Source: Hormiphora californensis
Lineage: Eukaryota; Animalia; Ctenophora
Assembly (NCBI GenBank): GCA_020137815.1
Contig: CM035361.1
Span: forward strand, 5,270,001-5,334,000
DNA: 64,000 nt
Direction of reading: 5' to 3'
Part shown: positions 48,353 to 53,105 of the stretch, piece by piece
How the letters are laid out: every line of letters starts with the position of its first letter
How positions within the stretch are numbered: the stretch's first letter is position 1
Translations under genes and position numbers: made by a program
The notes under the pieces: generated by a model
The model's database searches: none
Told to the model about the DNA's origin: nothing
Seen by the model: the letters and a program-made list of their open reading frames with translations, nothing else

Positions 48353-51300
48353 TCAGACCATTGACATCTTATAATTCTTGGTGTTCATCAAGGTCTTCCC
48401 ACACATACAGCATATACTCTTCTTGTATGCACACGCTGAAAGAAAGGGGGATGTTAGAAACTAAATGGATTATTTAGCACCAAATGAGACTTTTTCATAA
48501 AATTTGGATAACTTCAGACAAATGAGAGATGAGGATTTGCCTTGTTTGACCCTGTTTCCCGTGCCCCTCACAAATGAGGGAAGAAGGGATAATTACCTTG
48601 GCAATAGTGTGCTTTAGGATGATGTGTTGAGACTCGACAAATTCTACACTTTCTTAAAAGCTGCTTTAGTTGGATCAAATCTGTTCCCTTTAGCCGCCGT
48701 CAGAAGTTTGTTTCTCGCTCAGTTTCTGTTTACCAGTATCAGACGCTGAAAAGATAGGGAGGTGTTAGAGACTGATTTTTCCAAAGGTGGGGGGGGTAAG
48801 ATCAGGGTACCGACAATGAAAACAGAAAAGATCAGACAGACAAAGACAATTTACAAACAAGACACTGACAGAGTGGACTGAAATCCTGGCATTTCTGCAC
48901 CGCGCGCACATTACACAGAGGGGGAGATCTGGAGTGGGGATTGCAGCCAACTTTCATCTGTCGCGCGCACCCAACCCTGCTAGTCGTTGTGGGAATGTTG
49001 CAAAATTGTCCCACCCTCGCCGCTCTGCAAATATGACAACATGTCGGCTGGCTGATATGTATGTGAGTGTGAAATGTATAACAGAGAGAAGATTGAAAAG
49101 GGAGAGAGATTGGGGGATGGGAGGGGGTAAATTAAAACAAGCAGGTTTTTTAGTAAGAGACAGTCCAATTTCCACCAGAACAATACAATTCACACACTCC
49201 ATCATATAACGTCTCTGCTCTGAAAAACAGACGTCACACCGCGGGGCTTTGCACGTCCACAATATAGATAGTGAAATCTGAAGAAAACAAAAGAAAAGTG
49301 TTGTATATATATACGTTGTATTATTATTATATACAGGGTGGGTAAAATTTAGCTACCATCATGATGGTTTTAACTTTTAACTACGGACACCCTGTAAATA
49401 ATTTGTTTATATAGTTGATGAGGGATGAAATATTTAAACTGTACAAGGTCGCATAATACGATAATCTATATAACTCTCTCTCTTTCTCACTCTCTCGTGA
49501 CTTTTTCTAATTCTCAGATTCTACTTTGTAAAAGACTAAATGAGATATATTATACACACACATTGTATTAGAACAAACTCTCTGGAAAAAATGATATAAA
49601 TTTAACCAACTCACACACGCTCACACACAACAAGCTTGAAAAAATAGTCACACCCAAGTTTATAAACCGAAAAAAAAATGAAAGAATTTAAATCCACTGT
49701 TAAATTCTGATTTATTAGCTTTCACACACGCACACACTTTCAACAAAATAACATCTGAAATTAGGACATCATTTCTTTTTCATCTCAAACTGAAATATAA
49801 ATTTCACAGCTCGAAATAATCTGAACTCTTGCACTCACACTCTCTCACCGAAACATCTCAGCATAACATTTATCAAAGTTATACCTCACATCTTTATAAC
49901 TACAAATCATCACACTCTGCTCGTGGGGCGATGTGAGTGTGATCTGCTCACTGCTACCCACATCAAGTTTATTCAAAGTCATCAAAATGTGAGGAAGATC
50001 AACCCAAGGGGCACCTACGTCATCAACTTTATGGAAGAGATAATTCCTGAATATCTTCAGGATATGTCTCTCTCCTGTCTCGCACCATGTTGGATCAAGT
50101 TGGTGTTCAGGGCGGTCTAGTATCGAGTTTATCTTACACAGGAGTCTGAATAACCGGCCATTTTCCAGCTCTTTAACCAACTCTGCTTCAGTCCGATCAC
50201 ATTGCTGCCGTAACCGTTCGATGTGAGCATAAAACCGGGCTCCGATCAGCGGCATGAGATCATTAACTTTCTTCGGCTGGAGAGATTTCTGAAGTATATG
50301 CTGTAACAACATCTTAACATCCTGACTATAAACACTACTAATCATCTCACTGCTCTTGCTAAGGTTGTTTTGGTGCATGGCAGCGAGACTGTTACAACTC
50401 AAACACACAACCAACTTCCCCAGATCCACAATATCCTTTTGTTGGTGCATGTAGGTTTGTTGGATGGTGAACGATTTCTCGTCTGTGACCCCCGGAGGGA
50501 CACTTACTAACATGTCCAACACGCCCACACAGTTAACCCGTAACCTGTTCCGTCCAGTTAGCATTATTTTAGAGGGGTATATGACTCGGCAAGATAGTTT
50601 TTGAGCGTGTAGTGTTCGAATTGCAGCCGTTAGTTGAATTATAAAGTTCCATAGTAGAGACTCATCCAGTTGGGAGTAGGAGTACTGTTGCGTCCCGAAA
50701 TACACCTGTTTCAATGTTTGAGCACCGGCATGGAAGTCCGTTACAACGACGAAACTCGTATCCCCAAACTGTTTAGTCACAAACGCATCGTGTATACTAA
50801 CGATATTACTATGCCTGATGCCCTTCCATATCTCTAACTGTTTCTTCAGTTCTGCGTTATTCACTGTACAGTTAGGGAACCGCCGTAATGTGTACACACA
50901 CCCATCAATAGAGGAATATGCCCGGTAACAAATGGAAGAAGACCCAAATACATCGGGCTGATCCTGCAGTGTTGACTCATTTTCAATAGGTAACAATGCG
51001 TAGTAGTTATCAACATCAGGTAACTTGCTCTCCAAATAAAGAGATGAAACACTCTGTCTATAGATCAGTTCCTGGCATATTTCACTGCCACTGGGGGTAT
51101 CAGGTGATGGCGTCTCCATGTGGAGTGGAAGGGGTATAAACGCCCGGGCTGGTGTTTCCATTCGTGTGGTAGGATGGTAGTATTTAGTATAGGATGCTGT
51201 GGTGGGTGAGGTCGCGTCCACACAACTAACATTACCACCGGGGGTTGAGGAAGGAACGAATGCTGGTGTTGCTGCTATATCATCCAGTGTAAAGTTGCTG

Positions 51301-53105
51301 AATGAGGTTTTAAGGAGGGAGGATGTAGTACCGTTAACAAGAGTTGCAGCGGAGGGAGACGGAGTAGAGGCGACTGGAGTTGGTGGCGTGGGAGGGAGTG
51401 GTGGGGTGTCGATGTGTTTGAATTTACACGATCGGCCGTGGATACAGAACCCGTGTTCTGTGTATTTAGGACAGATGTCAGCCATGACGCTTGTTTCACA
51501 TTCTAGCTTTGAGGAAGGGAGGTTGGTTAGTTTCTTAGAGGAAGGGAGGTTAGTTAGTTTCTTAGAGGAAGGGAGGTTGGTTAGTTTCTTTGAGGAAGGG
51601 AGGTTGGTTAGTTTCTTAGAGGAAGGGAGGTTGGTTAGTTTCTTAGAGGAAGGGAGGTTGGTTAGTTTCTTAGAGGAAGGGAGGTTGGTTAGTTTCTTAG
51701 AGGAAGGGATATTGGTTAGTTTCTTAGAGGAAGGGAGGTTGGTTAGTTTCTTAGAGGAAGGGAGGTTGGTTAATTTCTTTTGGGAATAGTTGGTTAGTTT
51801 CAAGGGAATACCAAAGGTTGGGGTTGTCGTTTGTTTTGATTGGGTCATAAACACAGGGGTCGGGGAAAGATAGAGAGAGAGAGAGAGAGAGAGAGAGAGG
51901 GGGGGGGGGAAAGAGAGAGAGAGAGAGAGAGAGAGAGAGAGAGAGAGAGAGAGAGAGAGAGAGAGAGAAACAAGATGGAGAAAGAGTTGTGATTTGATGT
52001 ACAGTGTGGTGTAGTGAAACCAATCCCCAATTTACTGTTATATAAACCACCTTCCCGTATTAGCAAATATCAAGGTAACCCACATTACAATTACAACAAC
52101 AACAACAACAAAATGGATTTATATACCGACTAAATAGACAAGTACTCTCGATTGGTTCGAAGAGCAATTGCCATTCATAGCGGTTCTCTCATCCTATCTT
52201 GACATATTGGTTGACAAAAGGTCGTAAATGGTAACTCATACTGGTGACTTATAACTGACATATATAGTAGACTTTATTAACTCTCAACACTTGGTGACTG
52301 TGGGTGACAAGTATAATCAGAAAAAATAATAACAAAAATGATAAACTGAAAAGTATCTTAGATTATAAAGAATTATGTGACAGCAGCAGGGGTGACCGTG
52401 TGAGAACGGGGACTAATGAATAACCGAAAAGAAATTATTAAAGACTGATGTCGAAAACCAAATAAGGTCTTTCAGAGAAGGTAACAGTAGCATCGAACAG
52501 GTAGGTCTTCAGGCGAATACGGAAGGAGTCCTCTGAAGGTGCGTCTCTGAGGTTCTCCGGTAGGTTGTTCCAGACATGGGGGAGATATTGGGATATTCTC
52601 CTTTTTCCCAGTTTGCTCACTTTCACATTTCCAGAAAGTAGCTTTAACTTGTAATGGTCTACTTTCGTACTACAAAGACACAAACAAACAAAACAAACAA
52701 TTTAATCAAAACGGGCCCAAGAAAACACAAATAAACAACTGAAGACACTAACAAACAGAGAAGAGCACTAGAAAACACATGTAGAAAGAATGACTTGACC
52801 CACAATCGATACACAATAATGACATACACTTGACTTACTAACGTGGCTTCTCGACCCAGCTTTCCAGGGATCTTGTGTTACACTCACACCTAGCTTCTTT
52901 TCACCTAAGGGAGGAGGATGTAATGTTAACTGAATCACGATCCACAACTAGAGATAGTGAGATAACGATGGATAGTATTTGAAACTGCAATGGAAGATAA
53001 GGAATAAATGAGTTGATATGAAACACACTTTTCTGAAAACAATCTTGACAAGTGAGTGATCCTTTTCAAGATTGATTGAGTAAACTTACATTTGTCGCAC
53101 ACCAT
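48353..53105 (-). CDS. CRIPT: CRIPT cysteine-rich PDZ-binding protein, 4 exons (53090-53105, 52839-52904, 48597-48745, 48353-48435), ~103 aa
   Basis: MVCDKC-EKKLGVSVTQDPWKAGSRSHV-TSDTGKQKLSENKLL...RFDP...KCRICRVSTHHPKAHYCQ-ACAYKKSICCMCGKTLMNTKNYKMSMV*; two extra A in exon 3 homopolymers. Confidence 0.93.
49845..51485 (-). CDS. PAN3: PAN3 deadenylase regulatory subunit, intronless, 546 aa, nested in CRIPT intron 2
   Basis: CCCH finger CPKYTEHGFCIHGRSCKFKH, PAM2-like ATPAFVP, pseudokinase, ELENGRLFRLLCK and W-ETGER knob. Likely start MADIC (51485), not the repeat-derived upstream extension. Confidence 0.95.
   Translation of the reverse strand: MADICPKYTEHGFCIHGRSCKFKHIDTPPLPPTPPTPVASTPSPSAATLVNGTTSSLLKTSFSNFTLDDIAATPAFVPSSTPGGNVSCVDATSPTTASYTKYYHPTTRMETPARAFIPLPLHMETPSPDTPSGSEICQELIYRQSVSSLYLESKLPDVDNYYALLPIENESTLQDQPDVFGSSSICYRAYSSIDGCVYTLRRFPNCTVNNAELKKQLEIWKGIRHSNIVSIHDAFVTKQFGDTSFVVVTDFHAGAQTLKQVYFGTQQYSYSQLDESLLWNFIIQLTAAIRTLHAQKLSCRVIYPSKIMLTGRNRLRVNCVGVLDMLVSVPPGVTDEKSFTIQQTYMHQQKDIVDLGKLVVCLSCNSLAAMHQNNLSKSSEMISSVYSQDVKMLLQHILQKSLQPKKVNDLMPLIGARFYAHIERLRQQCDRTEAELVKELENGRLFRLLCKINSILDRPEHQLDPTWCETGERHILKIFRNYLFHKVDDVGAPWVDLPHILMTLNKLDVGSSEQITLTSPHEQSVMICSYKDVRYNFDKCYAEMFR
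51507..51800. repeat. 27-bp x ~10 array of branchpoint plus polypyrimidine units upstream of the PAN3 acceptor
   Basis: Minus-strand unit AAGAAACTAACCAACCTCCCTTCCTCT. Confidence 0.9.
52438..52672 (-). mobile_element. 3' fragment of an L2/CR1-type LINE ORF2
   Basis: PHVWNNLPENLRDAPSEDSFRIRLKTYLF tail motif. Confidence 0.75.

What the first reader, a model, noticed from the sequence alone, without database searches (positions are those of the whole stretch)
48353..53105. Intronless PAN3 nested on the same strand in CRIPT intron 2, with a splice site that would make an in-frame CRIPT-PAN3 fusion
Seen: CRIPT exons 1-2 (53105-52839) and 3-4 (48745-48353) flank a complete single-exon PAN3 in the same orientation. 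CRIPT exon 2 ends ...CAC GTT A|GTAAGT. The TAG acceptor before 51502 is followed by AA TGT GAA ACA AGC GTC ATG, so cis-splicing gives MVCDKC...SHV-KCETSV-MADIC in frame. The AAG 4 nt upstream gives a stop instead. Inference: PAN3 is either an alternative last exon of the CRIPT transcription unit, so that CRIPT and the deadenylase adaptor are mutually exclusive products of one pre-mRNA, or it is released from the intron by SL trans-splicing. An in-frame junction has about a 1-in-3 chance of arising at random.
Basis: partly seen in the sequence, partly recalled or inferred. Interest (0 to 1): 0.88.

Follow-up and report, generated by a model that had tools for sequence, protein, structure and literature searches.

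The report
PAN3 gene nested inside CRIPT intron
A complete single-exon PAN3 gene lies, in the same direction, inside an intron of the small CRIPT gene of a comb jelly; the two most likely make separate messages, PAN3 by receiving a trans-spliced leader, so this is one more example of a gene arrangement already known to be common in this genome, not a fusion protein.

Summary

- **CRIPT splicing:** environmental cDNA contigs show the junctions 53090/52904, 52839/48745 and 48597/48435, so CRIPT is spliced across PAN3.
- **Spliced leader:** the same leader sits on the RPL14 and CRIPT 5' ends. It is the published Hormiphora californensis leader.
- **RPL14 to CRIPT gap:** the RPL14 poly(A) site lies only about 84 nt before the CRIPT leader acceptor.
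- **PAN3 5' end:** no read covers it here, so a 52839->51502 junction is neither seen nor excluded.
- **Orthologue evidence:** all ctenophore PAN3 proteins found start at the same Met. That acceptor is therefore most likely a trans-splice acceptor.
- **The in-frame fusion:** it is one of 13 upstream AGs, a 1-in-3 chance, and nothing supports it.

Parallel nested genes and leaders are already published for this genome, and this scan has noted many same-strand nests on other DNA of it. Whether PAN3 is cut out of the CRIPT pre-mRNA or has its own promoter is open. As assembled, CRIPT exon 3 carries two extra bases that the cDNA lacks.

The parts
53267..53668 (-). RPL14 coding sequence (single ORF, 133 aa). 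Its mRNA starts at leader acceptor AG 53688-53687 (exon start 53686) and ends at a poly(A) site at 53231-53228.
   Evidence: Pfam Ribosomal_L14e 7.8e-22. Contigs with the leader at 53688 and a T20 run at 53228.
53090..53145 (-). CRIPT leader acceptor (AG 53145-53144) and exon 1 (53143-53090, ATG at 53105).
   Evidence: Two X2 contigs carry the leader at 53145. The leader's terminal AG overlaps the acceptor AG (leader sequence in PMC8527503).
52839..52904 (-). CRIPT exon 2, ending in phase 1 (...CACGTTA|GTAAGT).
   Evidence: Joints 53090/52904 and 52839/48745 in cDNA contigs. Translation.
48746..52838 (-). CRIPT intron 2 (4093 nt), which holds PAN3.
   Evidence: Joint 'skips 4093', GT..AG on the minus strand, X2 contig record 6.
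52438..52683 (-). 5'-truncated tail of a young LINE (apurinic-type endonuclease plus reverse transcriptase), sense orientation.
   Evidence: At least 150 genomic matches, many 96-99% identical and lying in ~1011-aa ORFs. Pfam RVT_1 and Exo_endo_phos on a full copy.
51868..51968 (.). (CT)n microsatellite.
   Evidence: Tandem Repeats Finder.
51507..51779 (-). 27-bp x10 tandem array. Each unit ends in a pyrimidine tract plus AAG (acceptor-like). It is unique to this locus and not coding.
   Evidence: Orthologues lack any N-terminal extension.
51486..51505 (-). TAG acceptor (51505-51503) and 17-nt PAN3 5' UTR (51502-51486), with a minimal uORF ATG-TGA (51501-51496). Proposed leader trans-splice site.
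   Evidence: Same 17-nt spacing, and an ATGT right after the junction, as in the leader-bearing Bolinopsis PAN3 mRNA L009. Inferred, not seen in this species.
49845..51485 (-). PAN3 coding sequence, single exon, 546 aa plus stop.
   Evidence: Pfam zf-CCCH, Pkinase, Pan3_PK. Single copy. 98% identical to the Pleurobrachia bachei model and 60% to Bolinopsis. Contigs cover 49408-51181 in four runs.
49408..49844 (-). PAN3 3' UTR. The only AATAAA is at 49716-49711. An oligo-dT contig ends at 49695 and a random-primed contig runs on to 49408.
48597..48745 (-). CRIPT exon 3: 149 nt in the assembly, 147 nt in the cDNA. The extra bases near 48711 and 48653 break the frame.
   Evidence: Three-frame translation. 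'Left out 1' at 48711 and 48653 in the X2 contig. Pfam Cript 19.3 bits on the last piece.
48353..48435 (-). CRIPT exon 4 with stop. The 3' UTR continues to at least 48171.
   Evidence: Pfam Cript 30.7-36.3 bits. Contigs X2 record 6 and X4 record 17.

Best explanation
PAN3 is an ordinary, conserved, single-exon ctenophore gene. It sits in the sense orientation inside intron 2 of CRIPT, in what is almost certainly the Hormiphora californensis genome. It is one of the roughly 2,400 nested intronic genes already reported there.

Shown: CRIPT mRNA receives the spliced leader at 53145/53143 and is cis-spliced exon 2 to exon 3 straight across PAN3.

Inferred: PAN3 mRNA is a separate message. Its 5' end is made by spliced-leader trans-splicing at the TAG acceptor, so the exon starts at 51502, 17 nt before the ATG. 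Its 3' end is made at its own poly(A) site inside the intron.

Open: where the PAN3 precursor starts. I put about 0.45 on a start of its own inside the intron and about 0.35 on the RPL14/CRIPT read-through transcript.
For: Shown:
- cDNA joints for all three CRIPT introns, including 52839->48745.
- An identical leader on the RPL14 (53688) and CRIPT (53145) 5' ends. It equals the published H. californensis leader, which is found on at least 56% of Iso-Seq reads (PMC8527503).
- PAN3 is single copy with full PAN3 domains.
- PAN3 is transcribed: contigs cover 49408-51181 in four runs.

Inferred:
- Five ctenophore PAN3 proteins start at the same Met, and a sixth starts further downstream. None has an extension.
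- The metatranscriptome contig L009 is 98% identical in protein to Bolinopsis microptera PAN3. It begins with a leader ending AATTTGAG, joined 17 nt before the ATG. The window's TAG acceptor is also 17 nt before the ATG, and the exon starts xATGT in both.
- The published paper reports 2357 nested genes, 'many parallel with the host'.
Against: - No contig in the four runs covers 51182-52418, so the Hormiphora PAN3 5' end, the leader on it, and the absence of a 52839->51502 joint are not observed.
- A search for short N-terminal PAN3 fragments in the protein collection was blank.
- 44% of Iso-Seq reads in the paper lack the leader.
- Under the nematode rule (my knowledge), an acceptor with a donor upstream on the same RNA is cis-spliced. 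That would favour some exon 2-PAN3 chimeras if PAN3 is transcribed from the host promoter.
- The Bolinopsis evidence comes from another order of ctenophores.
Confidence: 0.75

Rival explanations
1. Operon inside an intron. RPL14, CRIPT and PAN3 are transcribed as one precursor. PAN3 is released from CRIPT intron 2 by leader trans-splicing plus polyadenylation, in competition with exon 2 to exon 3 cis-splicing. Each precursor would then yield either CRIPT or PAN3. This variant shares the trans-splicing step with the best explanation and differs only in where the precursor starts.
For: - The RPL14 poly(A) site (53231-53228) lies only 84-88 nt before the CRIPT leader acceptor, and both carry the leader. 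That spacing is operon-like.
- PAN3 lies on the same strand, is intronless and therefore possibly retro-derived and promoterless, and is preceded by strong acceptor-like sites.
- The scan holds many first-reader notes of same-strand nests in this genome.
Against: - No polycistronic or intron-containing contig was seen. Intron 2 outside PAN3 and the LINE has zero depth.
- Operons had not been reported in ctenophores as of PMC7986045.
- A donor upstream on the same RNA should favour cis-splicing to the PAN3 acceptor, giving chimeras that no orthologue data show.
- Contig depths cannot rank expression.
Confidence: 0.35
2. PAN3 has a conventional promoter and capped 5' end inside the intron, near the repeat or (CT)n region, and is not trans-spliced in Hormiphora.
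For: - 44% of Iso-Seq reads lack the leader.
- No leader was observed on PAN3 here.
- Nested genes in flies and mammals generally have their own promoters (Drosophila and mammalian nested-gene papers listed, titles and abstracts only; my knowledge).
Against: - The orthologous mRNA in Bolinopsis is trans-spliced at the homologous distance.
- There is a strong pyrimidine tract plus TAG 17 nt before the ATG.
- The 5' UTRs of the two neighbouring trans-spliced genes are similarly short, 18 and 38 nt.
Confidence: 0.12
3. Functional in-frame CRIPT(exons 1-2)-PAN3 fusion protein made by using PAN3 as an alternative last exon.
For: The phase-1 donor at 52839 and the TAG acceptor at 51502 are in frame with no stop before the PAN3 Met.
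Against: - The prior is 1/3, and only 1 of 13 AGs is in frame.
- The only exon-2 joint seen goes to exon 3.
- No ctenophore PAN3 protein carries an N-terminal CRIPT piece.
- The Bolinopsis mRNA carries a leader whose last codons give a stop in the PAN3 frame.
- The 27 CRIPT residues would be only a fragment of its zinc-binding fold.
Confidence: 0.03
4. The nesting is an assembly artefact.
For: - CRIPT exon 3 carries two single-base errors relative to cDNA, so the assembly is not perfect.
- No contig links PAN3 to the CRIPT exons.
Against: - The cDNA joint skips exactly 4093 nt between canonical GT and AG.
- The assembly is a chromosome-scale long-read and Hi-C assembly.
- Single-base indels are a different class of error from a 4-kb misjoin.
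Confidence: 0.02

Closest known systems
Parallel nested intronic genes of Hormiphora californensis (Schultz et al. 2021, PMC8527503)
   Same: A whole gene lies inside one intron of a host gene, on the same strand, with a transposon flanking on one side, in a genome that trans-splices a leader.
   Different: Nothing in kind. This pair is not singled out in the paper's text. Here the host is itself shown to be trans-spliced and lies 84 nt behind RPL14.
Nematode/tunicate-type operons resolved by spliced-leader trans-splicing
   Same: The leader sits on the downstream genes. The gap between the upstream poly(A) site and the next acceptor is short, about 84 nt for RPL14 to CRIPT.
   Different: No polycistronic precursor is shown. 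Only a single leader type was seen here. PAN3 lies inside an intron, not in tandem. Operons had not been reported in ctenophores as of 2021 (PMC7986045).
Classical nested genes of Drosophila and mammals
   Same: A gene within an intron, with host splicing proceeding across it.
   Different: Those genes use their own promoters and capped 5' ends (my knowledge). Here a trans-spliced leader is the likely 5' end.
Spliced-leader-tagged retrogenes of dinoflagellates (PMC6050394)
   Same: An intronless gene in a trans-splicing organism. The same genome holds many leader-headed retrocopies.
   Different: There is no relict leader upstream of PAN3, no parent copy, and no poly(A) tract or target-site duplication. 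The intronless state looks old and shared among ctenophores.
PAN3, adaptor subunit of the PAN2-PAN3 deadenylase
   Same: CCCH zinc finger, pseudokinase and C-terminal Pan3_PK domain, at full length.
   Different: Shorter linker than in vertebrates (546 versus about 800-900 aa). Intronless.

Membership tests
PAN3 (PAN2-PAN3 deadenylase subunit) | C-terminal Pan3_PK domain after a pseudokinase domain | tested here: met
   PF18101 167 bits, residues 407-544. Pkinase 26.5 bits, below the Pfam cut-off, as expected for a pseudokinase.
PAN3 (PAN2-PAN3 deadenylase subunit) | N-terminal CCCH zinc finger | tested here: met
   PF00642 21 bits (cut-off 20.5), residues 4-24. Conserved in ctenophore orthologues.
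PAN3 (PAN2-PAN3 deadenylase subunit) | PAM2 motif binding poly(A)-binding protein | not tested
   Conserved ..RAFIP.. and ..P.F[IV]PSS stretches in the linker look PAM2-like from memory only.
CRIPT | Match to the Cript family, with CxxC pairs and a C-terminal PDZ-binding tail | tested here: met
   Exon 4 scores 36.3 and 30.7 bits, above the 25.5 cut-off. An exon 3 piece scores 19.3 bits.
Nested intronic gene (parallel) | The whole transcript of the guest lies within one intron of the host, on the same strand | tested here: met
   The host joint 52839->48745 is in cDNA. The guest ORF and the guest contigs (49408-51181) lie inside it. The guest 5' end was not observed.
Spliced-leader trans-spliced gene | Leader sequence joined to the mRNA at an AG acceptor | tested here: inconclusive
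   Met for RPL14 and CRIPT and for Bolinopsis PAN3. No coverage of the Hormiphora PAN3 5' end.
Operon resolved by trans-splicing | Short gap between the upstream poly(A) site and the downstream leader acceptor | tested here: met
   RPL14 poly(A) at 53231-53228 to the CRIPT acceptor at 53145-53144 is 84-88 nt. This applies to RPL14-CRIPT, not to PAN3.
Operon resolved by trans-splicing | Polycistronic precursor RNA | not testable with these tools
   Only contigs of four environmental runs could be laid, once. None bridges two genes.
Alternative last exon / fusion transcript | Junction from the host donor to the guest acceptor in RNA | tested here: inconclusive
   No such joint was seen, but there is no coverage at 51182-52418. 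The orthologue proteins and the orthologue mRNA show no fusion.
Recent retrogene | Intron-bearing parent copy, poly(A) tract, target-site duplication or relict leader | tested here: not met
   Single copy. No A-run after the 3' UTR. No relict leader: score 12 against a shuffle mean of 11.6.

The most novel reading that the evidence does not exclude
RPL14, CRIPT and PAN3 form one transcription unit. The nested PAN3 is cut out of the CRIPT intron by spliced-leader trans-splicing and polyadenylation, in kinetic competition with CRIPT exon 2 to exon 3 splicing. That would be an 'operon inside an intron' giving mutually exclusive products, and the first demonstrated polycistronic unit in a ctenophore. 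The ten-fold array of acceptor-like units in front of PAN3 would act to favour trans- over cis-splicing.
Probability: 0.3. Interest if true: 0.7.

Novelty: new member of a known kind. Interest (0 to 1): 0.33.

Why it matters
[quoted passage not shown] How host and guest are kept apart is unsolved.

This locus is a compact test case of under 6 kb:
- The host is shown to be trans-spliced.
- The host lies 84 nt behind a highly expressed ribosomal protein gene.
- The guest's orthologue is shown to be trans-spliced at a conserved position.

If the guest is fed by host transcription, trans-splicing would explain why this genome tolerates so many same-strand nests, and it would establish operon-like expression in ctenophores. 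If the guest has its own promoter, the locus is ordinary.

Tried and rejected
No genomic context of PAN3 or CRIPT in Pleurobrachia, Bolinopsis or the ENA ctenophore contigs could be fetched, so synteny is untested.
- **Short PAN3 N-terminal fragments.** A protein search with the first 150 residues, which could have shown a CRIPT or repeat extension, found nothing.
- **First leader pattern.** It assumed the leader ends ..TTTG+GT and found only retrocopy-like sites. The paper shows the leader ends ..TTTGAG, and the corrected pattern gives at least 422 sites.
- **Recent retrogene reading** rejected: single copy, no relict leader, no poly(A) tract.
- **N-terminal extension reading** rejected. The 669-aa ORF through the 27-bp repeats (in-frame ATG at 51848, seen in the sequence) is not a real extension: orthologues start at the Met of 51485, and the repeat is unique to this locus.
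- **Loose end at 51181 in X3** is an inverted copy of nearby PAN3 sequence, that is, a contig artefact and not a junction.
- **Papers.** Derelle et al. 2010 and the supplement of Schultz et al. 2021 are not held.
- **Contig depths** were not used to rank expression.
- **Joined models.** The joined CRIPT protein and the hypothetical fusion were not built or searched. Frames were computed from distances only.
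Full report
**What is in the sequence.**
Everything lies on the minus strand.
- RPL14 is a single ORF at 53668-53267 (Pfam L14e).
- CRIPT starts at 53105. Its exon 1 ends at 53090, exon 2 is 52904-52839, exon 3 is 48745-48597 and exon 4 is 48435-48353. All three introns are GT..AG.
- Exon 4 alone passes the Pfam Cript cut-off (36.3 bits, 30.7 bits).
- The 4093-nt intron 2 holds a 546-aa ORF (51485-49845) with a CCCH finger, a pseudokinase and a Pan3_PK domain (2.7e-49). 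This is the only PAN3 in the 110.7-Mb assembly, and CRIPT is also a single locus.
- A script over the 330 nt upstream of the ATG finds 13 AGs, and only this one is in frame. That is what a 1-in-3 chance gives.

- As assembled, exon 3 cannot be read in one frame. It needs one base removed near 48711 and one near 48653.
- A 27-bp unit repeated ten times (51507-51779) lies directly before PAN3. Each unit ends in a pyrimidine tract plus AAG. The array is unique to this locus.
- The ORF at 52683-52438 is the tail of a young LINE with at least 150 copies.

**Transcript evidence.**
- The oligo-dT run X2 gives joints for all three CRIPT introns, including 52839->48745, which skips exactly 4093 nt.
- The same cDNA contig lacks one base at 48711 and one at 48653. 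The CRIPT frame is thus intact in RNA, and the two extra bases are most likely assembly errors.
- Contigs end in the same foreign sequence at the RPL14 5' end (53688; X1 and X2) and at the CRIPT 5' end (53145; two X2 contigs).
- A T20 run marks the RPL14 poly(A) site at 53231-53228. It lies 84-88 nt before the CRIPT acceptor.
- PAN3 is covered from 49408 to 51181 in all four runs.
- Nothing covers 51182-52418. Neither a leader on PAN3 nor a 52839->51502 joint could be seen or excluded.
- The depth bins around exon 2 are fully accounted for by the two spliced CRIPT contigs, so there is no sign of unspliced intron.

**Organism and literature.**
- The foreign 5' sequence matches the 3' part of the leader published for Hormiphora californensis, as far as the 24 loose letters reach. 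That leader ends ..AATTTGAG, so its last AG overlaps the acceptor AG in the alignment (PMC8527503).
- Assembly size and contig number fit too.
- Operons had not been reported in ctenophores as of 2021 (PMC7986045).
- This scan holds 23 first-reader notes of nested genes in introns, most of those listed on the same strand as the host, on other DNA of this genome.

**Orthologues.**
- The protein search found ctenophore PAN3s: Pleurobrachia bachei at 98% identity, Bolinopsis microptera at 60%, and five unnamed ENA or Logan proteins.
- Five of them start at the Met of 51485 (M-[ATN]-x-[IV]-C-P-[KN]-Y) and none is extended.
- The long ORF through the 27-bp array is therefore not coding.
- Three unnamed proteins are full-length ORFs on genomic-size contigs. 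This suggests, but does not prove, that the intronless state is old in ctenophores.

**The decisive indirect result.**
- A degenerate pattern over the zinc-finger codons found one JGI metatranscriptome contig, L009.
- L009 is a complete PAN3 mRNA whose protein is 98% identical to B. microptera PAN3.
- It begins with 26 nt ending AATTTGAG, a ctenophore leader, followed by 17 nt and then the ATG.
- In the window, the TAG acceptor is also 17 nt before the ATG, and the exon starts xATGT in both species. That gives an upstream ATG in each: ATG-TGA in Hormiphora, and an 11-codon overlapping uORF in Bolinopsis.
- Read in the PAN3 frame, the leader ends in a stop.

**Mechanism.**
- Shown: CRIPT and RPL14 are trans-spliced, CRIPT is cis-spliced over PAN3, and PAN3 is transcribed.
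- Inferred (0.75): PAN3 is a separate mRNA, trans-spliced at 51502 and polyadenylated inside the intron. The only AATAAA is at 49716-49711, and an oligo-dT contig ends at 49695.
- Open: the precursor. The operon-like RPL14-CRIPT spacing, the sense orientation and the intronless guest favour a shared precursor (0.35). The lack of any bridging RNA, and the expectation that an upstream donor would cis-splice to the guest acceptor, favour a start of its own (0.45).
- A functional fusion is unlikely (0.03).

**Comparison and novelty.**
This is a new member of a known kind. Both the parallel nest and the leader are published for this genome, and the fusion reading is unsupported. The locus is still a good test case for how host and guest are separated.

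**Limits.**
- Read laying and the metagenome scan could each be used once.
- The runs are environmental, from the same or a sibling species (RPL14 0-2 mismatches, PAN3 about 98.6% identical).

Noticed in passing
L020 (G000:C3:2250700-2256300, minus strand) and L021 (G000:C4:7940400-7945900, minus strand); window 52438-52683: Full-length copies of the young LINE (endonuclease plus reverse transcriptase) whose truncated tail lies in CRIPT intron 2 begin exactly with the 44-nt spliced leader. Their upstream flanks differ. Nine such leader+LINE junctions exist. The LINE transcript seems to be trans-spliced and then copied back with the leader.
   Followed up: partly
G000 genome-wide; window 20142-20162 (minus strand); loci L004, L007, L008, L011-L013: At least 422 genomic leader copies. 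Those inspected are followed by unrelated sequences, and some have no GT after the leader. Many of the '718 leader sequences' of the genome paper may therefore be leader-headed retrocopies, not leader RNA genes, as with DinoSL retrogenes in dinoflagellates.
   Followed up: partly
L006 (G000:C8:255011-258031): Short tandem units with ..AATTAATTTG followed by GTTTTG/GGTTTG and a hairpin-like stretch. This may be a variant leader-RNA-like array. Not analysed.
   Followed up: no
window 48711 and 48653: Two single extra bases in CRIPT exon 3 of the assembly break the frame. An environmental cDNA contig lacks both. Probably residual long-read indel errors.
   Followed up: yes
window 53144-53231: The RPL14 poly(A) site and the CRIPT leader acceptor are 84-88 nt apart, which is operon-like spacing. 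The RPL14 3' UTR is only about 39 nt and has no AATAAA.
   Followed up: partly
window 51496-51501; L009 29-64: An upstream ATG lies directly after the (proposed) trans-splice junction of PAN3 in both Hormiphora (ATG-TGA) and Bolinopsis (an 11-codon uORF overlapping the start). Possibly a conserved translational control.
   Followed up: no
window 1-64000: The window is very rich in minisatellite arrays: 30 Tandem Repeats Finder rows, for example 47 bp x37 at 8482-10234, 61 bp x19 at 37763-38923 and 41 bp x26 at 57174-58230. The 27-bp array before PAN3 may be just one more of these.
   Followed up: no
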